A stretch of 64,000 nucleotides of DNA, taken from contig OZ281499.1 of assembly GCA_965637545.1 (NCBI GenBank), positions 14,074,001-14,138,000 on the forward strand, written 5' to 3'. Under the pieces are notes generated by a model. The model was not told the DNA's origin and did not search any database. It saw only the letters and a program-made list of their open reading frames with translations. Position numbers and translations under genes: made by a program. Shown in pieces: positions 9,822 through 64,000 of the stretch (positions within the stretch are counted from its first letter, which is position 1; each line of letters starts with the position of its first letter). Source of the stretch: Phallusia mammillata (Eukaryota).

Positions 9822-11177
9822 TTACCTCACGCGCGGCAGAATCATTTTTTGTATGTTAATTTCGGCCTTGATTTTGTTCAGCCATTTATCTTCAAAAATA
9901 TCTAAAAGATTGGGTGAAGGCATTTGCACAAACACAACAAAAAAACACAGGTGGATGTGCGGTTTACGCTTTAATATCGCACTATGGTTCTCCGCGTAGT
10001 GGCGCAGTAGCGCAGCTCGGTCATTGTTTGCCGAGCAATCGAACGTTTTCCAAGTGGCGCGATGGGTATTCCACCGTGTGGAGAACTTGTTCTTGGTTTG
10101 ACCAACATATTGCTTGCCACACTTGCGGCAAGTGGCCACATAAATGCCGTAGTTGCGACATGTTAGATTTTGGCAAAGTTGGATACTGCCTGTGGGCGTT
10201 TTTAAAACGGTGGTATGGTACACCATAGTTTGGTGACTACCAAAATTACCACATAGTGCGCATTTTCCGCATGGACTTGAAGAGCCTGTGCCGTTGTCTT
10301 TGCCTGCCTTACCGATGGACAAAACTTTGAAGTTGGATAGAAAGTGTGCCAGTGTGGGTGGCCTTTTGTATGTAATGGAAGCCAAAGGTTCCATAGCTTT
10401 CTCTTTTTGAGTTAATAAAACACAAGCAGGGAATGCCGTAGCCCAAACAATTCGATTTTGAGGTCTATTTTTGTCTTCCGGCCCAAACCTTTCTTTCCAA
10501 CCCTCTGCGATGTGTAGCATGTCTTCCGTCATTCCTTGATGAAAACCAGAGAGCAAGCACTTCTCCCTGAGTCTGTTAAGACTGTTACGGTAATCTTGGT
10601 CTAGTTCGTTTAATCGACGCATGCGAATCGCTTCGCCAAAAACTATCGATTTAAAAACCGACGGCGGGTGGTGGGAATGACCGTTTAGAAAACTACGTCC
10701 TTTTGCAGTTGGTTTGATGTAGTCCCTTGTTATGAAACCTTTAGGTGAACTTTTTGTTGTGATGTGGTTTACGTCAAGAAACTCCAAAGCCTTGCCTTCC
10801 TCCTCAGTTGACACTGCCCTGAACGTAAGTGTCAGCCCGTAGTTTTCAAAACCCTTTTTAAGTGAAGTTTGTACTTGTTTCGTATTTTCGCTCCCGGATG
10901 ATATCCATAATATGTCATCTATGTACCTTTTGAAAAGATGAACACCACATATCACATCCCTGAGTGACTGAACGATGTAGTGGACGGCAATGTTTGCAAC
11001 CGAAACTGAATGGTTGACGCCTGTGACAATGCCGCTAGTTTGCCTATAGTAAGCATCCTTGAACTCAGTCACTACATTACTCAAGCAGAACATAACAAGT
11101 TGAGTGAGTAGATTTCTTCCTTTGACGCTAAAATTGGTATGTGTGCTCAAAGCTGAAGATAACGCTTGCTTTACCAA
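9822..11177 (-). CDS. PLE reverse transcriptase (partial) + Cys-rich linker + GIY-YIG endonuclease, 451 aa, 5'-truncated
   Basis: YRQTSGIVTG, RYIDD, LEFLD, HHPPSVFKSIVFGE, CGKCALC, YGIYVATCRKCGKQYVGQTKNKFSTRW. No internal stop. The N-terminal RT is absent, so this is not a complete gene. Confidence 0.9.
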   Translation of the reverse strand: MVKQALSSALSTHTNFSVKGRNLLTQLVMFCLSNVVTEFKDAYYRQTSGIVTGVNHSVSVANIAVHYIVQSLRDVICGVHLFKRYIDDILWISSGSENTKQVQTSLKKGFENYGLTLTFRAVSTEEEGKALEFLDVNHITTKSSPKGFITRDYIKPTAKGRSFLNGHSHHPPSVFKSIVFGEAIRMRRLNELDQDYRNSLNRLREKCLLSGFHQGMTEDMLHIAEGWKERFGPEDKNRPQNRIVWATAFPACVLLTQKEKAMEPLASITYKRPPTLAHFLSNFKVLSIGKAGKDNGTGSSSPCGKCALCGNFGSHQTMVYHTTVLKTPTGSIQLCQNLTCRNYGIYVATCRKCGKQYVGQTKNKFSTRWNTHRATWKTFDCSANNDRAALLRHYAENHSAILKRKPHIHLCFFVVFVQMPSPNLLDIFEDKWLNKIKAEINIQKMILPRVR

Positions 11178-15677: not shown

Positions 15678-15886
15678 GTTTAGCCCAACCCTAACCGGTA
15701 CAATGTAGCCTTTGAAAATGAGAAAAGTTTATCTCGAAACGTCAGGCATTTCTAAATAAAATGTTTTCTGCAATATTGGCTGTGTGCTTTATGCTGAGAA
15801 TATTCTTTATAATTTCAGTTTTACTTAATCCTCCATTACATTCTGTTTTATTCTTTCTTTTCAGACTTAGTGCCACATTTTTTACG

Positions 15887-17668
15887 ATGGCTCAGAAAAG
15901 AAAAATCTCTGATGAAAAACGTAAATTCAAGGATAGTTGGGAATTGAGATTCCTGGTGAAAGAACAAAGTGGTCGAGTTTTATGTTTAATTTGTAATGAA
16001 ATGATATCTGTTATGAAAGAGTACAATGTACAACGACACTACAGCACTCTTCATGTCACTGGCTATGATAAATACACTGGTGAGGCGCGGCGAGCCCTAC
16101 TCAATGATCTCAAATCAAACCTGCGTAAGCGCCAAGAAAACATGTTTCAATTAGTGAAGCCTTTGTCTTCTACAACCATTGCTTCTTATGATGTATCACT
16201 TTTGATGGCTAAATCCAAAAAGGCATTCTCTGACGGTGATCTCATTAAGCGATGTGCAATACCTATGGGAAAGGCCATGGGCTTTAACGATGCAGCTCGT
16301 GGGTTTGAAAAAATTCCACTCTCGCATCAAACTGTTGCTAGACGTGTTGAAGAGCTTAGCAATTTCGTTCAGGAGAAGGTCATGAATCAAATTCAGCAGT
16401 GTGTTTATTTTTCTCTCGCTCTTGATGAAAGCACAGATATAAGGGATGTCAGCCAGTTGCTTGTCTTTATTAGAAGTATTGACTCACAGTTTAATGTCAG
16501 TGAGGAGTTACTCGGCTTACTCCCACTTTTTACCACTACGAAAGGATCTGATATTTATGAAGCGCTGAATTCTTTAGTGAGCAAGTATGGTGGATTTCAG
16601 AAATGCTCTTGCATCGTTACAGATGGTGCCAAATCAATGACTGGAGCTAAAAGAGGGGTTATAGGGTACTTGAGAGATGCTGGAGTCGACTGCCCAATGC
16701 TTCATTGCATTATTCATCAAGAATCGTTATCTAGTCGCTGTATACGTTTATCTGATGTGATGCAGCATGTAATGAAAATTATTAATTTCATTAGAGGCGG
16801 TAATAAAGCGCTGAGACATCGTCTATTTGTTGATTTCTTGAAAGATTTGGATACAGAATTTTCTGACGTTTCACTCCATTCTACTGTTCGTTGGCTTAGT
16901 GCTGGGAAATGTTTGCAGCAGTTCTTCAGTCTGCGTAATGAGATTCTAAACTTTTTAGAAGAACTGAATGCAGACACTGATGGGTTTAAAGGTTTATTGC
17001 AAGACGTCAACTTTCTGAAAGGTCTAGCATTTTTCACGGATATTACTCAGCATCTGAATAAGCTCAATTTAAGTTTACAGGGTAGGAATCAAACAATTGC
17101 TTCTCTGTATGGTTTCATAGATGGCTTCCGCAAAAAATTATGTCTCTTCAAAAGTAATCTGCAAAGTAACATTCTGATTCACTTTCCAAGTTGTGACGTT
17201 ATTTCTAAAGAAATAGAGGACAATAACTTCTGCTGCTTTGTTGAAACTCTTGATACCCTGATTGAAGACTTCAACAAGCGATTTCAAGATTTCCGGCACC
17301 TTGAGAAAAACTTCAATGTATTCAATGCTCCGCTGACTATAACTATATCAGAAGCCGATGACGATTTGCAGCTTGAATTGTGTGACTTGCAAAGTGACCA
17401 GTTTTTATTAAGCAAAGCTACACTGCCAATCACTCAATTTTGGCCTCTTCTTTCTGAAGAGCATTATCCTAATTTACGCCGTTTTGGATTGCACTTGCTG
17501 TCAATGTTTGGCAGTACCTACCTTTGTGAAGCAGCATTTTCCGCAATGAAGTCGATTAAATCCAAAGAGAGGAATCTACTTAAACAAACATCTCTCGAAG
17601 CCTCCCTTCGTTTAGCCTTAACCTCAGTTGAGCTGGCTTCCAAAATACAGGCACACCCATCTCACTGA
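15887..17668 (+). CDS. hAT transposase, GTF2IRD2/SPIN-like, 593 aa, apparently intact
   Basis: MAQKRKISDEKRKFKDSWE, BED-like CLIC...RHYSTLH, LALDESTD (D1), VTDGA (D2), HCIIHQE, VRWLS, FGSTYLCEAAFS (E). No stops. The ATG at 15887 is preferred over 15761. Confidence 0.93.
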   Translation: MAQKRKISDEKRKFKDSWELRFLVKEQSGRVLCLICNEMISVMKEYNVQRHYSTLHVTGYDKYTGEARRALLNDLKSNLRKRQENMFQLVKPLSSTTIASYDVSLLMAKSKKAFSDGDLIKRCAIPMGKAMGFNDAARGFEKIPLSHQTVARRVEELSNFVQEKVMNQIQQCVYFSLALDESTDIRDVSQLLVFIRSIDSQFNVSEELLGLLPLFTTTKGSDIYEALNSLVSKYGGFQKCSCIVTDGAKSMTGAKRGVIGYLRDAGVDCPMLHCIIHQESLSSRCIRLSDVMQHVMKIINFIRGGNKALRHRLFVDFLKDLDTEFSDVSLHSTVRWLSAGKCLQQFFSLRNEILNFLEELNADTDGFKGLLQDVNFLKGLAFFTDITQHLNKLNLSLQGRNQTIASLYGFIDGFRKKLCLFKSNLQSNILIHFPSCDVISKEIEDNNFCCFVETLDTLIEDFNKRFQDFRHLEKNFNVFNAPLTITISEADDDLQLELCDLQSDQFLLSKATLPITQFWPLLSEEHYPNLRRFGLHLLSMFGSTYLCEAAFSAMKSIKSKERNLLKQTSLEASLRLALTSVELASKIQAHPSH

Positions 17669-45310: not shown

Positions 45311-46728
45311 TTACAGTCGATTAACTACATTATTTTGCCATGAAAGTTTGCCATTTTCTGACAAGAAATAATCCTTAAATGTATCCCTAATTAGAGCAGC
45401 TTCATGAGCATACATATTTGTACCCATTCTACCTATGGGTTGGAAGTTTGAGGAGTTTTGAATTTCATATCGCCATTCTCCAAATATCATATTTCCCATT
45501 CTGTCTTCCCGGTCAACATATGTTGGTGCACAATACATTCTTTCATTTTCCAAAGATTGCCTACTTTTTATCTGTAAAAAGTTATGTAAACAACAGGCAG
45601 CTTTTGTTATGGCAATTGCTTTTTGGGGCTCAGCTATAATAGATCTTCTGAATATTCGCCAGCGAGTGGCTAAAATACCAAAGGTATTTTCAATGACCCT
45701 TCTGGCACGTGATAGACGGTAGTTAAAAACACTTTTATCAAAAGGAAGTCTCTTTCCTGGGTAGGGTCTCATTAGGTTGGGTCTTAGAGGAAAAGCAGCA
45801 TCACCCACAATACAGTAAGGGACAGTTATATTGGTTTTTGGAATACATTCAGCAGCAGGCATATTTAAATCATCATTCATAAATTTTTTACCGTATTCAG
45901 AATTGGCAAAAACACCCCCATCACTGTGTCTGCCCGAATCACCAATATCTAACAAAGTAAAGCAATAATGTGCATCACATACAGCCATTAATACAATGCT
46001 ATGTGTTCCCTTGTAGTTAAAATATTCAGATCCAGCATTTTTGGGGGCCTGAATGACCACATGCTTGCCATCTATGGCACCTAAACACATTGGAAAATCC
46101 CATAAATCATCAAATTCCTTTGCAATTATTTTCCATTCTTCTGAACTTTGTGGGGGTTTAAGGTATTCTGGCTGCAATACAGACCATATTGCTTCACAAG
46201 TTTCATTGATGATTTGGCACACAGTTGAATGGCCAACTCTGTAACTCAAGGAAATGGTTGCTTGAGAGTCCCCGGTGGCCAAAAACCTGTAATAAATGTG
46301 GTCATATTAAAATAATGAACTTGCACATTAATCAACAAACAAGTAAAACCCACCTTAGCGTAATTGCGAGTCTTTGTGCAGATGAAATTGATTTTCTCCA
46401 GTGGGTATCCTTTTTGCTGATCAAAGGTTCTACTTTCTGGAGTAGTTCATAGAAAGTTTGCACATCCATTCTAAAGTACTTGTGAAAGCTTTGATGGTCA
46501 TTCTGCATGTTTTTCACCAAGTTAAACTCACCCATTTCTTCTCTGTCCTGAAAGATTGGACGAACCCATACTCTGCATATAAACTAAAATCCTCAACAAA
46601 TTGATTTAGGCACTTTGATAGTGAAATATGTCTTACCTTCTTGGGTAAATAATGTTGCGAACAAGTATCATGATAAGAATCAATTGCTGTTCCAGCAACA
46701 ATAAAAGCAGTAGGTCAATTCTATCCAT
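45311..46728 (-). CDS. Harbinger DDE transposase, 3 exons, 428 aa, apparently intact
   Basis: Exons 46728-46637, 46572-46354, 46286-45311 (1287 nt). RVWVRPIF, FRMD..TF..LL, LAITLRFLATG, GAIDGKHV, YFNYKG..SIVLMAVCD, SDGGVF, VGDAAFPL, RARRVIENTFGIL, LHNFL. Confidence 0.92.
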
Positions 46729-52379: not shown

Positions 52380-54282
52380 TGTAGCGACTGATCACTTGCT
52401 AGATCTATTCCTTAATTGAAAGTCCGTTTTTTGCACAATTAAATCCGTAGTGACTTTGTATTGGTACAAAAGTAGAGTTGAGTTATAGTGATGATATTAT
52501 AGTGATATCGTATCGCTTGAAACAACATGTATATATACGTACAACTGTCAAAGACAAACAGTCAACAAAAGGTGACAACATATGATATACAGCTGTGTGG
52601 AATTAAATGCTTGAGGTGTTGATTGTTTTACTTGTCAAATACGTTTGTTCTGATCACAATCCCACATAGGTATCCCCCCTGACAAGTGTTTTCTGTATAA
52701 TGATACAAATTACGATTAGGGTAAATTTGATAAAAGTTCGACTTTTCACATCACCAAACACATAAGCGACCGCCACCAAACAGTTCTTTCCAATGACCAT
52801 TGCGCGCTCTTCGTTCTTCGGACATAGTCTTTTAAATTGTTCCACGACATGTACATATGCTTGGTCAGTGTCTACGTTGGTGTACAGAGGTCGACATGAT
52901 TGTTTGTTTTCTCAGCGCGGTCATTTCTTCAGCGGTGCTTGCTTGTGTATTGGTGAATGTTACTTGGTCTTGTCCGGATGAAAAACTTCAAAAACAAAAA
53001 TATAAACAGCAAAATTGCGGCAAACATATTGTGATAACTATTAAGTGTAGGTGAAGGGTTATGTCACAAAATCGGTAATCGGTCCAAACAAGAAATTATG
53101 CGTGTGTACGTTAATAACGGTTTGCAAAGTTCTCTACACCCTAATACTAAGCTCAACTCGCTAACTTTGAGGCATCACGGATTTGCTTTGCGAGGAGCTG
53201 ACATTCCCTAATGCAAGGATTTGCAGACCGTGGGATCAGACAATAAAAATGAATGAATGCAATACAATATGGCAGCCTTGCGACCTTCTCAGAACGATTT
53301 CCCACATAATCGCAACCTCAGTGAGTCGAGGGTTTCTAACGATGACATGCCGGCGAGTTTCATTGATCGCTCGGTGTGTGCTTTTTGCTCATAAACAGCA
53401 CATTAAGTAGATTGTTATTCCTCCGTATCAAACACACAGGTTACATATTTCTCGGTACAAGTTATAGTTAAGTTGACATCTTACAACTACCATACACTAA
53501 ACAGTTATTACGGCTTCAGACAATACGCAATACATTAAATTTTGACATATCCCAAGTTTGGGCTAGGCGTTAGATCTTAAAAGTGTAAATAAATATAACA
53601 TAACATAATGTTAGGCGTAGCTTGGTAATACAACATTCATCAAAATGCAAACTTAACTTTCATCGTTTTTAACAAACAACATTGTCATCGAAGTTGTGGT
53701 CCATTTTGCTTTGTTCCCTTCTTTTTGCTTGTTTTCCATTTCCATATCGATTTTTGCTACTTTAGGTCACGTCGCTGCTTGGTTGGTTGAAGTTAGAAGG
53801 TGTTGCTGGTTCTGATCACGTCGGGGTATCACCATTTACGTAGCGACCCCGACGCTTGCTGGATCTAATCCTTAATTGAAAGTCCGTTTTGTGCACAATT
53901 AAATCCGTAGTGACTTTGTATTGGTACAAAAGTAGAGTTGAGTTATAGTGATATCGTATCGCTTGAAACAACATGTATATATGCGTACAACTGTCAACGA
54001 CAAACAGTCAACTAGATCTAATCCTTAATTGCTAGATCTAATCCTTAATTGAAAGTCCGTTTTGTGCACAATTAAATCCGTAGTGACTTTGTATTGGTAC
54101 AAAAGTAGAGTTGAGTTATAGTGATGATATTATAGTGATATTAAAGTGATATCGTATCGCTTGAAACAACATGTATATATACGTACAACTGTCAAAGACA
54201 AACAGTCAACAAAAGGAATTAAATGCTTGATGTGTTGATTGTTTTACTTGTCAAATACGTTTGTTCTGATCACAATCCCACA
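52380..54282 (-). mobile_element. Non-autonomous LTR retroelement, copy 2 (same family as 30712-32332)
   Basis: LTRs 52380-52666 and 53839-54282 (the latter with an internal duplication and TG>CG start), 4-bp TSD CTAT, tRNA-Trp-like PBS at 53815-53834. Internal region colinear with copy 1. Confidence 0.9.
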
Positions 54283-55384
54283 CTATAATAGGTTTCATCA
54301 TACAGTAAAGTTTCTTCATTCTCCTCTTTATCATTGCACTGAATACTTGCACGTTTTATTCTAAAGACATGATACAATACAGTGTTTAAAATATGGTAGC
54401 CAGTTAAAAACCTCTAATGCTTTTTTTACATTTGCTCCTCTATCAGACACAAAAGTAACTGATTTCATCAACTCCATTGTAAAACCATACTTTATTAAGC
54501 TTCTTACCAATTCGTTTGTAATATAATCTGCAGATTTAACAGATGGAGAAAATTGCTCACAAAATATGGCACTTTCTTCGATCCACTGTGCAGTACATGA
54601 CATATAGCTTTGTTTTTTATGGCTATCTGTCCATAAATCAACAGTCATGCCGACTCCTCCATTGCAATGTATAGCCTGATTTAATTTTGCAATCAAATTA
54701 CCTCTTTCCTCTGCTGCTGACTCTTACATACTTGCTGATGGTATTTCTTGAAGGCAAAACACCTGAAACATTCACCTGTCCATATTTTGCGCCTACATTG
54801 ATTAAAGTCTGTGCAAAGTTCTTCATTCCACTTCATTCTTGTTCCACATGTCTGGCTAAGTGGGTTGTGCCTGTCGTGTGGCTAATATACTTGAAACACT
54901 TCAAGCACTGTCTGCATGCTAACATCGGAAGTTGTTTGGAAGCCGAAGATTCTGCTCCTGCCTTCTCTGCCACTATGCCAAAAGTGTTCCAAATGCTAGA
55001 TTTTCCGCATTTTTTTTATAATACAGAGCTCGCCTGCCTCCAAACTTTTTTTGACTTAGCAAAAATACCAAAAAAAAAAAAAAAATTGATAACAAAAAAA
55101 TCGAATAACCCTAATTTAACGTTTACGTGTACTCTAAAATTCTAAAGGCATACAACCAATTGTTATTTCACAATAGCTCTGCTTAATCATGACAGAAAAA
55201 CGTATCAAACCTGTGTACATAAAAGTTGAGAACTTCTTTAAAGCAAAAGTAATTACACAAGTTGCACGGCGTGCGGCATTGACGCTGCATAAAAATTTAT
55301 TAATGCCGCGGCCGCGCATAAAAAAATACCTCAAAAAATTGCGCGGCCGTCACGGTAGAGCTACTAACGGAGTGCCTCCTTGGA

Positions 55385-55920
55385 CAGTGGTTCTCAAACT
55401 TTTTTGTGCGCGACCCAAATCTGAGCTTTATGAACTTGTTGCGACCCAAGCCTCAAACATCAAAATATGTGTTTTTTATTTCTTGTAACTTACGAATACC
55501 TACTTGTCCTTGAATGCTAACTGTTACATCTCAAGTTCAGTTTCGCATGATTAACCTCGTATCATTCCCCGTGCTAACACGTTACAATCGCCGTGTGCGT
55601 AACCGAATGTTGGAAGGCTATTGTCTGTATGTTGTAATGATTGGTTCATTTTGCCGAACAACGTGGTCGAGTGAGGCTGTATTTCGCTATGGTAGTACAG
55701 TAGCTGGGTGCCATCTAAACTCTCAGAAAACCACTTACTTATGATGCAATACTCCAAGGTTACGAAGATAAAGCCACATAAAATGCGTTAGTTACAATAA
55801 TTCAGTCATGACTAGGAATTGGAAATACTTGAAATGAAAAAGTTCATTTAGGCAGAAATTGAATCACCATAGCGCGACCCATTTTTTTACCCTGCGCTAC
55901 CCATACTTTGAGAACCAATG
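55385..55920. mobile_element. hAT MITE
   Basis: TIR CAGTGGTTCTCAAA / revcomp CATTGGTTCTCAAA with GCGACCCA subterminal motifs. No TSD found. Confidence 0.7.
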
Positions 55921-56297
55921 GGGAGATCCAAAAGTGCTTAATTTTCGATAGGTGGCGCAATGGAGCATTCACGCCAAAATGAAAAAAAAAAAAAATTCGC
56001 GCCAAACAAAAATTATTTTATAGAAGGGTTTGATTTAGTATATTTTTTTTATCTGTTTTTAAACTATCTGGTTTGATTTAGTATATTTTTATGTGTTTTG
56101 ACTGTCTGCATTACAATAATGCATTTCAGGTAAAAATTGACATAAAGTTAACAAACTGTAATGTGGGGAAAATTTGTATGGGGGATGGGGGAAGTGAAAG
56201 GGGGGGGTAGGGGAATTAAAAGACAGAGTTGGAAAAAAGTAAGTGTTAGATAGTTTGAACAGTTGAACATAAAATTAAATTGTTGTGTTTGTTGCAG

Positions 56298-57308
56298 ACG
56301 AAAAAACCAATTAATACTGGCAGACAAAAACGGTGAGATTTTATGATGAAATGTTTTGTGTGTATTTCATGGTTAATGTATTCATTATTTTTCAGATTCA
56401 TACCGTACAAAAAAATTGTACGCCTGCAAAAGTAAGTGAACTATCTTAAATGAATTCAAATTTTGATGAGAAAATAATTTTACACATAAAACATTTATTT
56501 GTAGGCAAAATATAATTCCTCGACATTCAAGGTAAGCTACAACATTGCATAAATTTTTTCTTGCCTATATGACAAATTATATTGTTTGCAGATGGCTATC
56601 CAGGCATTTATTTTTTTTAAGGTTTATTGTTTGAAGTAAGGTTGATTTTTGTAATATTTGATGAATAGAAAGTTGTAACAGTACTACTAATGGCACACTA
56701 TGTTTTTTTACACACAGGGAGAACAATAAAAGTAACTCAAACTGTAAGTTTGTATTGTAGACTTTTTAACTTGCAAATGTTGTAACAGTACAACTAATGA
56801 CACACTATGCTTTTTTACACACAGGGAGAACAAATAAAAGAAACTCAAACTGTAAGTTTGTATTGTAGACTTTTTAACTTGCAAATGTTGTAACAGTACT
56901 ACTAATGACACACTATGCTTTTTTACACACGGGGAGAACAAATAAAAGAAACTCAAACTGTAAGTTTGTATTGTAGACTTTTTAACTTGCAAATGTTGTA
57001 ACAGTACTACTAACGACACACTATGCTTTTTTACACACAGGGAGAACAAACAAAAGAAACTCAAACTGTAAGTTTGTATTGTAGACTTTTTAACTTGCAA
57101 ATGTTGTAACAGTACTACTAATGGCACACTATGCTTTTTTAGACACAAGAAGAAAAAGTGGTTTGAATGTAAGTATGGGTACAAACATCTTTCAAAAAAT
57201 ATTCTTATACTAAACTGTTTGTGTGCTTTGCAGAAAACAAGGAATAAAAGTTTATTAGCAGTTTGTGGCTGTATGATATTTGATGACAGTTTAGGACAGA
57301 AATGGTGA
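56298..57308 (+). other. Putative microexon gene (about ten exons of 26-44 nt, 60-82 nt introns), product unknown
   Basis: Successive YAG|exon|GT(A/G)AG blocks at 56298-56332, 56396-56431, 56505-56531, 56592-56635, 56718-56743, 56825-56851, 57041-57067, 57143-57168, then a last exon from 57234. Confidence 0.6.
56672..57140 (+). repeat. 108-bp tandem repeat, ~4.3 copies; each unit is a 27-nt microexon plus an 81-nt intron
   Basis: Period measured from ACTTTTTAAC at 56761, 56869, 56977 and 57085. Each unit contains GTAAGT, TACTAA(T/C), a T-tract and CAG. Confidence 0.92.
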
Positions 57309-57742
57309 AATTTTTTTGCAAGGTGTTTAAAAAAATTGTGAGAATTCCAACCACACCCATGAGGCTCTCATTCGTGGTCGTTGGCATTTTTGTTTACCCA
57401 GACGCCTCGCCAGTAGCCATATGAAACTGGGGGTTCTTAGAACCACACCATTTGAGCGTTCGAGCCTTTAGTTTTAGCAACCGTCCTAGGCTTTCGGTTA
57501 ACCACATCTTTTGAGCGTTCAAGTCTGCAGAAGACAGATTGGTTAACCACAACCAGTTAGGCGTTTAAGCAAAAATGCTTATTGGTTAACCACACTCAGG
57601 CGTTCAAGCAAAAAAAAGCTGTTCATAAACAAATGAGCTTTTCGGACATTGGAAGGAATATTACCATCTCTTTCTTATTGAAAGCCAAAAAAATAAATAA
57701 CACAAATTGCACTAATTTTTGCGCAACCGGGTGACATGGCAA

Positions 57743-60700
57743 TTAGGGACAAATGAACCTTTTGTCTGAAATAGGACACTGCGAAATGTCAAAGCAACTG
57801 GTGTGAAAACCTTGTTTACATCTCATACATGTAATCCAGTCACTTTTCGCCATGCCGATAGTTTTTACATGTTTGTCAGTCCCACACATTTTACATTGAT
57901 CTCTCTCTAGTTTGCCTTGAAGGCAGTTACCAGATATAAGGTTAATATCACACACCAATCACCAATTGGTTTTGAATGTCAACTGCCAAAAGAATCCAAT
58001 GGCGGTGTGAAGGGTTCCATGGAATAAAAATAAGCTTTTTATCGATTAGAGACATATCATGCCAAAGCTTTCCAATAGGTCTCATATTTTCCAGGAGTTG
58101 TGCCATCATAGTACAAACATACAATGTATGGTTGTTGGCAGACACTATTTGCCACAAATAGCTGTCAATTACATCGCCAAACAGCCATCCAACTACAAAG
58201 TGTTTGTCAAATATTTTTAAAAGTTGTTCTTCAAGTTTTGGTAAAGTTTGTTCCAGTGACTTTAACTCCAAAATTGAAAGCGAATGATGTCCATTTACTA
58301 AAATCTTTTCATTGACTTTGTACCTGTTAAGGCTGTCCAAACTAGGTGTAAAACATTTTGACCCTGTTGACAAATTGACCGTTCCAGAAGTTTCGTTGTA
58401 TACTGGGGACGGCAAAGTAGTCACTTGGTGCAGTTGCTGCATAGTATTTGCAAAAGCTCCCACTCTTGATGTAAATGGGTTTGTCTTTGGTCGTTTACGG
58501 GGAAGCTCATCACCACTATTAGACAAAGGCATCTTTCTTTTTGTTGCACCAAACTTTTGTTCTGAAATTTGGGAAATTCTTACATGTTTTTAATGTCACT
58601 TAACAAATCATTAAATTTCTTTTTTTTTTAAATTACAAATCATAAAAGTATTTGTGGGTGACTTTTTAAATGTCTCTGAAGACAGTAAATAAGTTTCAGG
58701 AACATCAGAGATGCAATTACTTGCTATAGCTTCTTCATCTGATTTTGTTGCACTTATATAGTTCACAACATTTGGATCCAACACCATGTGAACAGAGTTG
58801 TGATACCATTCTGGTAAGCTGGACCAATCAACATCATCATACTTGTTAAACACAGCAAACATGTGCTTGCATGGCAAGAAGTGTCGTGTAAAATCTGCAC
58901 ATGTGCATTTGGGAAATTCATCCCTTGATCCAAATTGAACGGTGTATATTTGGTTAGTAGAATCACTTTTAACTTTTTTGATAAAGTACTTCTGAAGTTT
59001 AACATTATCTAACCAAAATACACTGCACTGAAAATTTGTTAATGCTGTTTGATAACTTTGCTCGCTTTCAGCACTTGCTATAGCTCTCATAAATGCTAAA
59101 ACTTCATCTTTGTTATCTCGAACTCCATTTTCTGACTTTTTCACCCAGCGCTCCCATACTTGCTCACGATGAAAGTCGCAAATTAATACATTGCAATTTA
59201 CAAAAGTATTAAATTAATACCTTATTCTTGTCACTAAAAATGTATATACCCCCATGTTCAGCAATAGAAAGACATATAATTGTGCTTACCTGAAAATACA
59301 CTTTCAATGGCATGTATTTCAGCATCACATTTGTCTGTCATGAAAAATGAAGGTTTCCAGGCAAGTGTCCATTTTTAAAAAATTGAAAGAGCTTCTTCAA
59401 TATTGATTTGCCTTTCATTTTAAGTGATAAAACTTGCAACAACCTGGTAGTTTACGTTTGTCTTAACACACAAAAAAAATAAGGGCAGAGCATACTTCCG
59501 ATGTTTTATAAGTGGCATCAAGTAACGAAATGTCTTGCCCATAACGAAGTAGAAGTTTGCGCTGCCAATGAAATTAATGGACAAATAGCATGGTTTGTTC
59601 GGAAGCAATTACAGGAGCTGTTATTTCATCGGTAAGATCTCAAGAAGTGTTTTGGTAGAACTGGAAAATGGCCGAGAAAAGATTTTGTCTTCTGGATCAC
59701 CAGCCTTGACCCACTCATCAACCAAACATTGGACATTTGTCTGATCCATTTTTGCAAGCTTACGTTTTAAAAATGACCTGTAGAAGTGACTCTCAACATC
59801 CTTTCTTGTTGGAAAAAATCTCCGGTTTGTGCTTGATGGTACATCATCATTTTTAAACAGCTCATGTATCACAAATGATTTTAAGCCTCTCATAATCTCC
59901 CCAATATTACACACACCTTCATTCACCATTTCATCAATTTTTGTAATGATTCGTTTGTCAACCATTTGAAGAAATCCTGCTGACTAACCCCTGGCACTGT
60001 GGTTTTTTTCATGGCACGCCAACCAATTTGCGCGTTTATATTAAAGTAACAATTTATCCGGTTACACTGCTTGTTTTCAGTTTTTATCATGCCATTGTCT
60101 TAAAATTCATCCTTACATGCACAAAACACACTGCTTTCTCTTTATCATCAATATTTGTTGGCACGAATCACTATAATTTAGAAAAACGTTGGCACGCGAG
60201 GTCATTAACACATGGAAATAACAAGTAAATTGGCACGCGTCGCCTAAAAGGATGCCGACCCCTGCAATACGATATCCAACAAATTGCAAGTTTTTTTTGT
60301 TTAATTTTGATTTTTGTGTTTGGAAAACATACTTCTCCAATAACATGGCCAACATGACCGTCGCTGCTTGGAAAGGCAATACTACAGGCACGTTCCTTCA
60401 ACAGAGACTCATCACTATCTTTTAAAGCCTTGCGAATAAATTTAGCTGATTTTTTCCTTTGGTGTTCTGATCTGGTGACTTCCTGATATTAAACAAAGCA
60501 AAAAATAAAATTTGTCATACTGATAAAGCATTAATATACTTACACAAAATTGGGGAAATCTCAGCACTTCCTGTATAAATATTTTTGCTTCGCAATTGCA
60601 TTTTTTTGTACCTTGAATACACATCTTTTTTTGGCAGGATTAGGATGGTCAAGTAACTATAAATGGCGACAATGCTATTTTAAAAACCTTGCTTGTAGAT

Positions 60701-60830
60701 TGAGCCATGAGACACCATTATACCGGATTGGGAATGCATGGCTTGCGTTTATCATTTCCTTCTTTGTTGTAATCTTTGCCATGTTGGCACTCCAGCCACA
60801 CACTTTGTACAATAACATATGGGACTAAAT
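57743..60830 (-). pseudogene. MULE transposase-fusion gene: CaRF-like domain, DDE core, SWIM, Ulp1-like, PHD; multi-exon, frameshifted
   Basis: WLECQHGKD, GTKKCNCEAKIFIQEVLRFP, HVGHVIGE, DKRIITKIDEMV...NRRFFP (CaRF-like); LLDATYKT..LPLFFLCVKTNVNYQVVASF, FMTDKCDAEIHAI, CDFHREQ (MULE); CTCADFTRHFLPCKH (SWIM); WLFGDVIDSYL..IPWNPSHRHWILLAVD (C48/Ulp1-like, partial); CKMC..WITCMRCKQGFHTSC..FICP (PHD). Confidence 0.8.
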
Positions 60831-61907: not shown

Positions 61908-64000
61908 TGTTGACAAAATTATCAACAATAAACATACCATGGAACTTTTTTGAGTATTAAGCGTGTCCGGTTAAGAATGAGCCGTGACACGCCCAAACGA
62001 GACAGGTAAACACAACGCAGGAAAAAGGCAAAACGAGAAAAAAGGCGTTTCTTGCAAACGTAATGCGTGTCGTCACCACACAGCTCCCCCCAGAAACGAC
62101 TTTTAAATTTTACGAGGACGTCCCCGTTTTTTTATATTTGGGGTTGGCAAAGGCTGCGAAATATCAATTATTGCTGGCTTTAAACGGTCAATAGACACAG
62201 TTTGTTGCTTTCCCCGACATCTAAAACAAAATATTTTTCATTGCGCTGTCGAACCTTAAAAGGACCTTCATAAGGAGGATTTAGTGGAGGTTTGTAAGAG
62301 TCCTTACGAACGAAAACAAGTTGACACTGAATAACAATTGTGGTACAGAATGTTTAGGGTTACAATGGCGTGATGTTGGCACTGGTAGCAATCTCGACAG
62401 TGCCTTGCGCAACGTTCGCACATATTCGTTCGGCAGGGGTTCTTGGTGTGTAGGTGGAATGAAATCTTCTGGAATTGGTATGGTTGAGCCGTACACCAAT
62501 TCTGCACTGGAGGTCTTCAGATCTTCTTAGGGTGAAGTGCGTATACCCAAAAGCACCCATGGTAACTCGTCGCACCAATTTACGTCCTTAAGTCGTGCAA
62601 CTAATGCAGTCTTGAGGTGCCGGGGAAGCGTTCAACCAGGCCATTCGCCTGTGGGTGAAATGCGGTAGTGCATTGATGTTTGGTGCCCAACATTTGCTTC
62701 CACAGACTTCCTTCCACAGATTGGACGTAAATTGTGGTCCTCTGTCTGATGTGATAAGACTGGGAACTCCAAATCTGGCGATCCAGTGAAAAGCTATTGC
62801 CCTTGCACAACTAGCGGTTGTGGCTTCTGCCATTGGAACTGCCTCCGGCCATCGTGTATAGCGATCGACTATTGTAAATAGATACTTTGCACCTCGTGAT
62901 TCAGGCAAAGGGCCGACAATGTCTACATGTATGTGGCTGAATCGTATATTTGGAACAGCAAACTCTTCCAGTGGCGCCTTCATGTGACAATGAATTTTCG
63001 ACCTCTGGCATTCGATGCATTGCTGCGCCCATAAGCGAACTTCTTTGTTAATTCCATGCCATGCAAATTTGTCGGACATAATCTTCTGTGTAATACGCAC
63101 AGATGGGTGACATAATCCGTGTATAGCATTAAACACCTTTCGCTTCCAGCTTGAGGGGACTATTGGTCGGGGAGAACCGGTGGATATGTCACATAATACA
63201 ATAGTTTGCGAAGGACCAATGGAAACATCTTCTAAATCCAGCGATGTCACAGCTGTGCGATATGCTTCAACTTCGTCACAATGTTGAGCTTCTGCTAACT
63301 GATGGTAATCCAAATCGATTGTTTGTTGTCGGACTGATGCCATGTATGACCGAGAAAGGGCATCTGCTACGACGTTGTTCTTGCCTTTTGTGTGCTGCAC
63401 ATCAGTTGTATATTCAGAAATATTTGTCAAATGCCTTTGCTGTCGAGCTGACCAAGGTTCTGCGACTTTTTTAAAAGCAAATGTCAATGGTTTGTGGTCG
63501 GTGTATGCTGTGAATGCTCTTCCTTCCAAAAAATAGCGAAAGTGTCGAATTGCTAGATGCAAAGCAAGTAGTTCTCGGTCGAACGTACTGTATTTCTTTT
63601 CAGCTTGTCTTAATTGACGACTAAAAAACGCAAGAGGCTCCCAGGAGCCATTAACCTTTTGTTCTAGTACCCCGCCTACAGCATGATCGGATGCGTCCGT
63701 GGTTAATGACACAGGTGCTTGTGGCTGCGGGTGAACAAGTGTCACTGCTTTAGCTAAAGCATTTTTCGCCTCATCAAAACTAGACTGCAGTTCTTTTGTT
63801 TGGGCTTTTTTTATAGAGCTTTATAAATGGGTAGCATAATGCTTGCGGCCGAAGGAATAATGCGGTGGTAGAAATTTACCATTGCTGCAGACCTTTAATT
63901 GTGTTTGGGCGTTGAAAGCGTTGAATGGCTGCTACCTTGCTTGTCAGAGGTTTAGCTCCGTTTGCATCAATGTGATGACCAAGAAACTCAATGTGAGTTT
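61908..64000 (-). mobile_element. Gypsy LTR retrotransposon (CsRn1/Kabuki-type), 3' part; runs off the window
   Basis: PPT GGGGGGAG at 62091-62084, LTR starting TGTGGTGAC at 62080. The far LTR end near 61908 (TGTTGAC on plus) is tentative. Pol lies upstream. Confidence 0.85.
62140..64000 (-). pseudogene. Gypsy pol: RT end, RNase H and integrase; frameshifted
   Basis: FLGHHI; TDASDHAVGGVLEQ, EKKYSTFDRELLA, TDHKPL, NVVADALSR; HGLCHP...CIECQ; HVDIVGP, IVDRYTRWPEA, SDRGPQFTS, HPQANGLVER; VSIDRLKPA. Confidence 0.92.

What the first reader, a model, noticed from the sequence alone, without database searches (positions are those of the whole stretch)
56636..57168. Tandem amplification of a complete exon+intron cassette (108 bp = 27-nt microexon + 81-nt intron)
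Seen: each repeat unit carries GTAAGT, a branch-point consensus TACTAA(T/C), a T-tract and CAG around a frame-preserving 27-nt exon (GGAGAACAAA(T/C)AAAAGAAACTCAAACT). Unit 3 has lost its acceptor (CAG>CGG at 56930-56932) and unit 1 is 26 nt. Inference: a snapshot of exon-number expansion by unequal crossover, with one copy already silenced; skipping would give 9-aa length variants. A repeat masker would call this a plain minisatellite.
Basis: partly seen in the sequence, partly recalled or inferred. Interest (0 to 1): 0.8.

Follow-up and report, generated by a model that had tools for sequence, protein, structure and literature searches.

The report
Tandemly repeated tiny exon-plus-intron unit
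A 108-base repeat in this (reportedly sea-squirt) genome looks like a 27-base exon plus its 81-base intron copied about four times inside a gene made of tiny exons, but no RNA has yet been seen from it.

Summary
A 108-bp tandem array (56672-57154, 4.5 copies, 96% identity, no indels) is the only such array in the window.

The array sits in register inside a + strand chain of 11 exon-like pieces (56161-57311). These have GTRAG donors, pyrimidine-AG acceptors and 59-82-nt introns. No comparable chain occurs elsewhere in the window or in 12.8 Mb of simulated sequence. The minus strand has no donors here.

Spliced, the chain gives one ORF of 137 aa or 83 aa, depending on the exon-4 donor; pI is 12 for the 137-aa model. 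The repeat exons read WRTNKRNSN, not the frame-1 reading GEQIKETQT. The 26-nt first unit is needed for that frame, so it is not a defect.

Two DNA runs hold a form in which the last repeat exon abuts the next exon, so predicted intron 57068-57142 is exactly missing.

Transcription was not found: no RNA run holds the locus. Rivals tested and not supported: minus-strand coding repeat and small-RNA host.

Verdict: probably a real exon+intron cassette amplification. Activity is unproven. It is a small-scale member of a known kind, tandem exon duplication.

The parts
56672..57154 (+). 108-bp tandem array, 4.5 copies
   Evidence: Tandem Repeats Finder: 96% matches, no indels, score 882
56161..56238 (+). 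Exon 0, coding part from an ATG. A possible acceptor lies at 56129. The donor is AAA|GTAAGT at 56239.
   Evidence: the 5' end is not defined
56298..56332 (+). Microexon 1, 35 nt. Acceptor ttgttgcag, donor GTGAGA.
56396..56431 (+). Microexon 2, 36 nt. Acceptor tatttttcag, donor GTAAGT.
56505..56531 (+). Microexon 3, 27 nt. Acceptor tttatttgtag, donor GTAAGC.
56592..56635 (+). Microexon 4, 44 nt with the strong donor GTAAGG at 56636, or 30 nt with the weak donor GTTTAT at 56622. It begins with ATG.
56636..56717 (+). Intron 4, 82 nt. The 5' half is unique. The 3' half, from 56672, is the first repeat copy and carries the branch motif, T-tract and CAG.
56718..56743 (+). Repeat exon U1, 26 nt (one-base deletion). 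It reads ENNKSNSN and shifts the phase from 2 to 1.
56744..56824 (+). Repeat intron, 81 nt: GTAAGT ... TACAACTAAT ... TTTTTTACACACAG
56825..56851 (+). Repeat exon U2, 27 nt, reads (W)RTNKRNSN
56852..56932 (+). Repeat intron whose acceptor is CGG (56930-56932) instead of CAG
   Evidence: The CGG version is also present without difference in a contig of run X2 covering 56878-57013.
56933..56959 (+). Repeat exon U3, 27 nt, identical to U2 but without an AG acceptor. It is predicted to be skipped, making a 189-nt intron 56852-57040.
   Evidence: the outcome is inferred
56960..57040 (+). Repeat intron, 81 nt, with branch motif CTAAC
57041..57067 (+). Repeat exon U4, 27 nt. It carries a T>C change that is synonymous (AAT>AAC) in the open frame.
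57068..57142 (+). Intron 8, 75 nt, the last partial repeat copy. Its acceptor has moved 6 nt upstream (TAC>TAG) while the old CAG became CAA. This intron is exactly absent from a DNA form seen in runs X1 and X2.
57143..57168 (+). Microexon 9, 26 nt. Its first 12 nt are still repeat-derived. The donor is AAT|GTAAGT.
57234..57311 (+). Exon 10, the last coding piece. The stop TGA is at 57309-57311. AATAAA lies at 57243. A high-copy element starts at 57339.

Best explanation
The 108-bp repeat is a whole splicing unit that has been copied head to tail. Each unit holds the 3' half of a short intron (branch motif, T-tract, AG), a 27-nt exon, and the 5' half of the next intron (GTAAGT...). Two neighbouring copies together rebuild a complete 81-nt intron, which matches the 59-82-nt introns of the rest of the locus. 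The array lies inside a + strand transcription unit made of about 11 tiny exons (56161-57311).

The most likely origin (inferred) is unequal crossing-over or replication slippage with breakpoints inside introns. Ongoing homogenisation would then explain why the inner units differ at only 2-3 positions, while the first and last units share an older variant (TGGCA).

If spliced as the signals predict, each full unit adds nine residues (WRTNKRNSN) to a small, very basic product. The product is 137 aa with the weak exon-4 donor, or 83 aa starting at the exon-4 ATG with the strong donor. Unit 3 has lost its AG. It should be skipped, which keeps the frame, or it may disturb splicing. The 26-nt first unit and the 26-nt exon 9 bracket the array and set the frame in which the 27-nt units are open.

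Shown here: the repeat, the signals, their register, the strand asymmetry, the ORF, and a DNA form that lacks intron 8 exactly. Inferred: that the locus is transcribed and spliced, that the product is a protein, and the fate of unit 3.
For: - The repeat is real and unique in the window.
- Exon chain: six consecutive microexons pass one rule, and the chain is broken only at the CGG of unit 3. The best chain elsewhere in the window is 2, and the best in 200 simulated 64-kb sequences with the locus's composition is 3.
- Four of the chained exons (E1-E4) share no sequence with the repeat, so their splice motifs are independent.
- Strand: 11 GTRAG on + and 0 on minus in 56000-57400. Seven of the window's 23 GTAAGT lie in this 1 kb.
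- Introns are 59-82 nt. The repeat introns have CTAAY with its A 27 nt (21 nt in intron 8) before the 3' splice site.
- ORF: 137 aa with the short donor (reached in 0 of 5000 exon-wise shuffles) and 83 aa with the long donor (P about 0.01). The frame is open across E1-E9 in 2.9% of shuffles.
- The one-base deletion in U1 removes the TAA that a 27-nt unit would show in the incoming phase.
- The U4 variant is synonymous in the open frame.
- In the last partial unit the acceptor was relocated (new TAG, old CAG lost) rather than simply lost.
- Runs X1 and X2 each hold a contig at about single-copy depth in which 57067 is followed directly by the first 15 nt of exon 9. This is a GT..AG-exact loss of intron 8 with no microhomology. 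The aligned left side is 27 letters, the exon length.
Against: - No RNA. None of 12 RNA-like runs from 4 studies holds sampled 31-mers of the locus or of exon 10. Two of them, when laid, cover only a 33-nt high-copy piece outside the locus. This is weak evidence: mRNA made of exons of 36 nt or less shares almost no 31-mers with the genome, the runs are contigs, and their tissues are unknown.
- The second DNA form keeps the ORF but shows 2 synonymous against 7 non-synonymous changes, and exon and intron SNP density look alike, so no constraint is visible.
- A further DNA form skips 56169-56448, which would remove E1 and E2.
- The product is low-complexity, and its A-rich exons make K/N/R codons cheap.
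- The neighbourhood is transposon-rich, and a high-copy element begins 28 nt after the stop.
- The intron-8-less form also lacks 57158-57222, which is not splice-like, so it is not a clean cDNA copy.
- The mononucleotide shuffles used for the ORF test are a lenient null.
Confidence: 0.55

Rival explanations
1. This is a dead or decaying copy of a microexon gene. The splice signals and ORF are inherited from a once-active gene (or from a paralogue elsewhere), but the locus is now silent, and the 108-bp array is simply a minisatellite growing in a relic.
For: - No RNA was found.
- One acceptor is already lost.
- No excess of synonymous over non-synonymous differences between DNA forms.
- Structural variants remove exons.
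- Transposons lie on both sides, and a high-copy element starts 28 nt after the stop.
- The only AATAAA before that element lies inside the ORF.
Against: All 10 donors and 9 of 10 acceptors are intact, and the ORF is unbroken in both DNA forms. The acceptor of the last unit was replaced, not lost. The RNA data are too thin to show silence.
Confidence: 0.25
2. This is an ordinary non-genic minisatellite whose unit happens to contain splice-like words. The surrounding 'exons' are chance matches in AT-rich DNA.
For: The DNA is AT-rich (33% GC here), where GTAAGT, T-runs and AG are common. There is no RNA. Genome-wide multiple testing softens the chain statistic.
Against: The chain includes at least six independent, non-repeat splice-site pairs in register, all on one strand. 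Nothing comparable occurs in 12.8 Mb of simulated sequence. There is also an ORF of 137 aa and a DNA form with exact loss of one predicted intron.
Confidence: 0.12
3. The array is a coding repeat on the minus strand. Its 36-codon unit (LCVKKHSVSLVVLLQHLQVKKSTIQTYSLSFFYLFS) is open for 158 codons (56708-57184).
For: The ORF exists, and the unit length is a multiple of three.
Against: - Any stop-free frame of a 108-bp unit is open through the whole array. The chance that at least one of six frames is open is roughly a third (my estimate).
- There is no ATG, no minus-strand donor in 56000-57400, and no acceptor next to the ORF.
- No homologue was found among 8000 scored candidates.
- Pfam gives only sub-threshold matches.
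Confidence: 0.03
4. The locus is a non-coding host gene whose repeated introns each deliver a small RNA (mirtron or snoRNA), as in repeated snoRNA host units.
For: The unit is a repeated exon+intron with very short, poorly constrained exons. Another note of this scan describes repeated non-coding mini exon-intron units in this genome (not checked).
Against: Rfam gives no match at E up to 1 on 55800-57700. The introns fold no better than shuffles, with z from +0.07 to +2.9. No C/D or hairpin architecture is seen in the repeated intron.
Confidence: 0.03

Closest known systems
Tandem exon duplication (duplicated exon with its flanking intron halves; source of mutually exclusive or additive exons; reviewed for human in PMC9741552)
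   Same: A segment holding an acceptor, an exon and a donor is copied head to tail inside a gene. The copies stay in frame.
   Different: The unit here is only 108 bp and is present 4.5 times at 96% identity, so it behaves as a minisatellite. The copies would be added one after another, not chosen one at a time. Expression is not shown.
Exon-bearing VNTRs and iterated exon-intron modules (from my own knowledge, not checked here: human LPA kringle IV-2 repeat; spider flagelliform silk gene with homogenised introns)
   Same: Exon number is set by the copy number of a repeated exon+intron module. Introns are homogenised together with exons.
   Different: Those modules are hundreds to thousands of bases and encode folded domains or long motifs. 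Here a nine-residue microexon sits with a near-minimal intron. Copy-number polymorphism was not demonstrated.
Schistosome micro-exon genes (MEGs); PMC4350168, citing DeMarco et al. 2010
   Same: Most of the putative coding region lies in very small exons, many of them symmetrical, so skipping would give products differing by a few residues.
   Different: MEGs are described as restricted to platyhelminths and as secreted (PMC4350168). This genome is reportedly an ascidian. No clear signal peptide is seen. Only 5 of 9 internal exons are multiples of three. No homology could be tested.
Ordinary minisatellite
   Same: It has a 108-bp unit, a few copies, high identity, and edge units more diverged than inner ones.
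   Different: The unit boundaries and content are in register with a one-strand chain of splice sites and an ORF that extend into unique flanking sequence.

Membership tests
Tandem exon(+intron) duplication / exon-bearing VNTR | Head-to-tail copies of one segment at high identity | tested here: met
   Period 108, 4.5 copies, 96% identity, no indels
Tandem exon(+intron) duplication / exon-bearing VNTR | Each copy carries acceptor, exon and donor in register with the gene's other exons | tested here: met
   Three of four full-length exon copies have CAG, and all have GTAAGT. The chain continues into unique exons on both sides. Unit 3 has CGG.
Tandem exon(+intron) duplication / exon-bearing VNTR | Copies keep the reading frame | tested here: met
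   The units are 27 nt. The ORF stays open through all units and flanking exons.
Tandem exon(+intron) duplication / exon-bearing VNTR | Copies are present as exons in mature RNA | tested here: inconclusive
   No RNA run holds or covers the locus. The only indirect sign is a DNA form with exact loss of intron 8.
Tandem exon(+intron) duplication / exon-bearing VNTR | Copy number varies among individuals | tested here: inconclusive
   Contigs of X1 and X2 leave different holes in the array (56926-56979 and 56764-56871). Collapsed repeats and filters can explain this.
Schistosome-type micro-exon gene (MEG) | Most of the coding region in very small symmetrical exons | tested here: inconclusive
   There are nine internal exons of 26-44 nt. 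Five are multiples of three (36, 27, 27, 27, 27) and four are not (35, 44 or 30, 26, 26).
Schistosome-type micro-exon gene (MEG) | Secreted product with a signal peptide | not tested
   No signal-peptide tool was available. By eye, the 137-aa model has none, and the 83-aa model starts with a short hydrophobic stretch (MAIQAFIFFKVYC).
Schistosome-type micro-exon gene (MEG) | Sequence kinship with a MEG family, within the platyhelminth range | not tested
   The spliced protein has no reference, and long typed letters are barred. By other agents' notes the organism is an ascidian. PMC4350168 says MEGs appear restricted to platyhelminths.
Small-RNA host gene with repeated intronic snoRNA or mirtron | Intron holds a structured, recognisable small RNA | tested here: not met
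   No Rfam match at E up to 1. Intron folds have z 0.07-2.9 against shuffles.
Minus-strand protein-coding repeat | ORF with relatives or gene signals on the minus strand | tested here: not met
   No homologue, no Pfam hit above cut-off, and no minus-strand donors.

The most novel reading that the evidence does not exclude
A tunicate has a micro-exon gene of the kind so far described only in flatworms. In it, a complete microexon plus a near-minimal intron (108 bp) acts as a minisatellite. Slippage or unequal crossover would then directly change exon number and add or remove a nine-residue basic motif. One unit is already knocked out by an AG>GG change, and a DNA copy lacking one intron records that the splice really occurs.
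Probability: 0.35. Interest if true: 0.55.

Novelty: new member of a known kind. Interest (0 to 1): 0.4.

Why it matters
If it is transcribed, this locus would show exon gain at the smallest possible scale. The repeat unit is barely larger than one minimal intron plus one microexon. Ordinary minisatellite dynamics would therefore write exon-number and protein-length variation directly. A single point change (AG>GG) would show how a new exon copy is switched off.

It would also be a convenient natural substrate for testing intron definition on identical, tandem 81-nt introns in an ascidian. It would extend micro-exon-gene-like architecture outside flatworms.

If the locus is silent, it is a tidy example of how a repeat masker's 'minisatellite' can hide gene structure, but nothing more.

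Tried and rejected
1. Minus-strand coding repeat. The ORF 56708-57184 has no homologues, no Pfam family above cut-off and no minus-strand splice signals. Rejected.
2. Mirtron or snoRNA host. No Rfam match and no excess folding. Rejected.
3. Whole locus as an old array of the same cassette. The donors are 94-108 nt apart throughout, but the older cassettes share no sequence beyond the splice motifs. The even spacing is better explained by uniformly short introns.
4. Paralogue or intronless copy inside the window. None found by blastn or junction patterns.
5. Expression. Two index searches and one laying of four runs found no RNA.
6. Look-alikes in the scan's notes, by sequence and by relatives: blank.
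The Atlas search with a hAT transposase gave no useful taxon. The species name rests on other agents' notes only.
8. Not done: any database search with the spliced 83-aa or 137-aa product. The pieces that do have references are too short for the length window of the protein searches.

Full report
**What is there**

Reading 56300-57500 and running Tandem Repeats Finder confirm a 108-bp tandem array at 56672-57154. It has 4.5 copies, 96% matches and no indels, and it is the only long-period array in the 64-kb window. The 33-nt exon+donor string occurs three times with at most one mismatch, against zero expected.

Put in the register of the GT, three full units start at 56744, 56852 and 56960 and differ at only 2-3 of 108 positions. 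The array is flanked by two partial copies:
- The 3' half of the intron that begins at 56636.
- The intron that begins at 57068, together with the first 12 nt of the next exon.

The first and last copies share a variant (TGGCA) that the inner three lack (TGACA). This is the usual picture of an array homogenised in its middle.

**Is it more than a minisatellite?**

The array does not stand alone. On the + strand, GTRAG donors lie at 56239, 56333, 56432, 56532, 56636, 56744, 56852, 56960, 57068 and 57169. Each is preceded at 26-44 nt by a pyrimidine-rich tract and AG.

This defines exon-like pieces of 35, 36, 27, 44 (or 30), 26, 27, 27, 27 and 26 nt between a first piece ending at 56238 and a last one starting at 57234. 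The introns are 59-82 nt.

The evidence that this chain is not chance:
- With one simple rule (GTRAG; YAG after at least 8 of 15 pyrimidines; exon 15-60 nt; intron 50-120 nt), this locus gives a chain of six consecutive microexons, broken only at the CGG of unit 3.
- The best chain anywhere else in the window, on either strand, is two. The best in 200 simulated 64-kb sequences with the locus's own composition is three.
- The four upstream microexons share no detectable sequence with the repeat unit, so their signals are independent of the repeat.
- The minus strand has no GTRAG at all in 56000-57400. Seven of the window's 23 GTAAGT lie in this 1 kb.

I take the exon chain as real sequence architecture, not chance. 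My rule is loose and the genome is large, so chance is not formally excluded by this test alone.

**Reading frame**

Joined as the signals predict, the pieces give a single open frame.
- With the weak exon-4 donor (AAG|GTTTAT at 56622), the frame runs from the ATG at 56161 to the TGA at 57309-57311. The product is 137 aa, pI 12, with 37 K+R against 4 D+E.
- With the stronger donor (GAA|GTAAGG at 56636), translation would start at the ATG that opens exon 4 (56592) and give 83 aa.
- Both enter the array in phase 2 and read the 27-nt units as (W)RTNKRNSN. In frame 1 (GEQIKETQT) unit 1 has a stop.

The one-base deletion in unit 1 is what lets the frame pass. A 27-nt unit entered in phase 2 reads ...AAC AAA TAA. 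The 35-nt exon 1, 26-nt unit 1 and 26-nt exon 9 together sum to a multiple of three.

In exon-wise shuffles, with the three identical units shuffled as one:
- An ATG-ORF of 137 aa never appeared in 5000 trials.
- An ORF of 83 aa or more appeared in about 1% of trials.
- A frame open across E1-E9 appeared in 2.9% of trials.

The null is lenient because shuffling breaks A-runs. This is therefore moderate, not strong, support for coding.

**Reads**

Both run searches found only two holders, X1 and X2 (one study). These cover exons and introns alike and behave as DNA. Twelve RNA-like runs of four other studies hold none of the sampled words, either of the 1.3-kb stretch or of exon 10.

I laid 55900-57500 on X1, X2 and two RNA-like runs, X3 and X6. 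The RNA-like runs cover only a 33-nt high-copy piece at 55924-55960 and nothing of the locus. Transcription is therefore not shown.

This negative is weak, for four reasons:
- A message made of exons of 36 nt or less shares almost no 31-mers with the genome.
- The runs are contigs, not reads.
- Their tissues are unknown to me.
- For the ascidian named in other agents' notes, the public RNA work I saw (MorphoSeq, PMC7237864; ANISEED releases, PMC5753386) centres on embryos and development, so these runs may well be embryonic.

The DNA runs add three things.
1. A second sequence form differs at about 4% of sites in exons and introns alike. It keeps the ORF, ending one codon earlier, but has 2 synonymous against 7 non-synonymous changes. 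No constraint is visible; the numbers are too small to exclude it.
2. Both runs hold a form that jumps from 56168 to 56449. This is not splice-like and would remove exons 1 and 2.
3. Both runs hold, at about single-copy depth, a contig with an exact intron loss. In it, 57067 (the last base of unit 4's exon) is followed by ACACAAGAAGAAAAA (the first 15 nt of exon 9, 57143-57157) and then by 57223 onward.

In that third form the first jump removes 57068-57142, exactly predicted intron 8, GT to AG, with no microhomology. The aligned left side is 27 letters, the length of the exon. That is what an intronless neighbour on the left would give, though I cannot see the contig itself.

The second jump (57158-57222) lies between two similar 11-mers, GTGGTTTGAAT and GTGCTTTGCAG. 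It looks like a slippage deletion, not a splice.

I read this as a DNA copy, either a paralogue or an allele, that has lost one predicted intron precisely. The usual cause of such a loss is a spliced RNA intermediate. It is the only evidence here that the predicted splice has ever happened, and it is indirect.

**Rivals**

- Minus-strand coding repeat. The minus strand is open for 158 codons through the array. That follows automatically from a stop-free frame in a 36-codon unit. The ORF has no ATG, no splice signals, no homologue among 8000 scored candidates and only sub-threshold Pfam matches.
- Small-RNA host, with the repeated introns delivering small RNAs. This fails: no Rfam match at E up to 1, and folds no better than shuffles.
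- Dead gene relic. This remains a serious alternative. Transposons crowd the locus (hAT, Penelope-like, gypsy-like, Harbinger, MULE). A high-copy element begins at 57339, 28 nt after the stop. The only AATAAA before it lies inside the ORF. One acceptor is already lost.

**How it most likely works**

Shown: a segment running from mid-intron through a 27-nt exon to mid-next-intron is repeated, so that adjacent copies rebuild complete 81-nt introns of the size class used by the whole locus.

Inferred:
- The array grew by unequal crossover or slippage.
- Each unit is recognised by intron definition and adds nine basic residues.
- Unit 3, with GG for AG, is skipped (a 189-nt intron, frame kept) or, if its intact donor is still used, causes retention and a stop.
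- In the last copy the acceptor was moved 6 nt upstream (TAC>TAG) while the old CAG became CAA. This looks like maintenance of a working acceptor.

**Comparison with what is known**

The mechanism is tandem exon duplication (PMC9741552 for the human cases). From my own knowledge, it also matches exon-bearing VNTRs such as LPA KIV-2 and the iterated exon-intron modules of spider flagelliform silk. The difference is scale: a minisatellite-sized unit with a microexon and a near-minimal intron, and additive rather than mutually exclusive use.

The gene architecture resembles schistosome micro-exon genes. These are described as built from very small symmetrical exons and as apparently restricted to platyhelminths (PMC4350168). 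Membership is not claimed here, because secretion, homology and alternative splicing are untested and only five of nine internal exons are symmetrical.

**Earlier notes of this scan**

These are unchecked by me unless stated.
- The scan noted the same locus as a candidate microexon gene for a very basic protein (s1-375496). I re-derived that model independently.
- Notes name the genome as the ascidian Phallusia mammillata.
- Notes mention retrocopies in it (s1-395739).
- Notes mention a locus with 'tandem 27-nt exon units' on another piece (s1-375574).
- Notes mention about 20 kb of repeated non-coding mini exon-intron units (s1-375403).

If these hold, such cassettes are a recurring theme of this genome, and the intron-less DNA form may belong to a paralogue.

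**Verdict**

The cassette reading is the best explanation (0.55). A silent relic is next (0.25), then chance (0.12). Expression, copy-number polymorphism and the fate of unit 3 remain open.

It is a new, very small-scale member of a known kind. Interest is 0.4, and would be higher if junction reads are found.

I did not search with the spliced protein.

Noticed in passing
window 57339-57640: A high-copy element starts 28 nt after the putative stop, with summed contig depth 10,000-42,000 against about 270-560 for the locus. It has internal sub-repeats of the form AACCACAC...GAGCGTTCAAG. It may be the terminal region of the neighbouring MULE-like element (57743-60830, minus strand) or a separate MITE. 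Loose ends of other genomic copies begin at 57339.
   Followed up: partly
window 55924-55960: A 33-nt piece has extreme depth in the DNA runs (about 190,000) and is the only part of the laid stretch present in the RNA-like run X3. It is a very abundant, transcribed repeat fragment.
   Followed up: no
window 56168-56449: Both DNA runs hold a form at about single-copy depth that jumps from 56168 to 56449 (280 bp, ends AA..TA, not splice-like). It would remove putative exons 1 and 2. It could be an allele, a paralogue or a diverged stretch.
   Followed up: no
window 56477-56478: All contigs of both DNA runs read TA where the window has AT. This is a possible assembly slip or a third allele, and it lies in a putative intron.
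   Followed up: no
window 52400-52660, 53860-54010, 54030-54290: Three near-identical copies of a segment of about 170-260 bp (CTAGATCTAATCCTTAATTGAAAGTCCG...) lie within 2 kb. A 20-bp tandem duplication of its start is at 54012-54051. They are probably terminal repeats of a transposon or nested insertions.
   Followed up: no
window 15761-17668 (+), 9822-11177 (-), 62588-63745 (-), 45311-46282 (-), 57948-59144 (-): The window is mostly transposon ORFs: hAT/FAM200-like transposase; RT plus GIY-YIG (Penelope-like); RNase H plus integrase (gypsy-like); DDE_Tnp_4 (Harbinger-like); and SWIM with a weak Ulp1 match (MULE-like).
   Followed up: partly
window 57158-57233: The last 11 nt of exon 9 (GTGGTTTGAAT) and the last 11 nt of intron 9 (GTGCTTTGCAG) are alike at 8 of 11 positions. 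A DNA form in both runs has the 65 nt between them deleted.
   Followed up: partly
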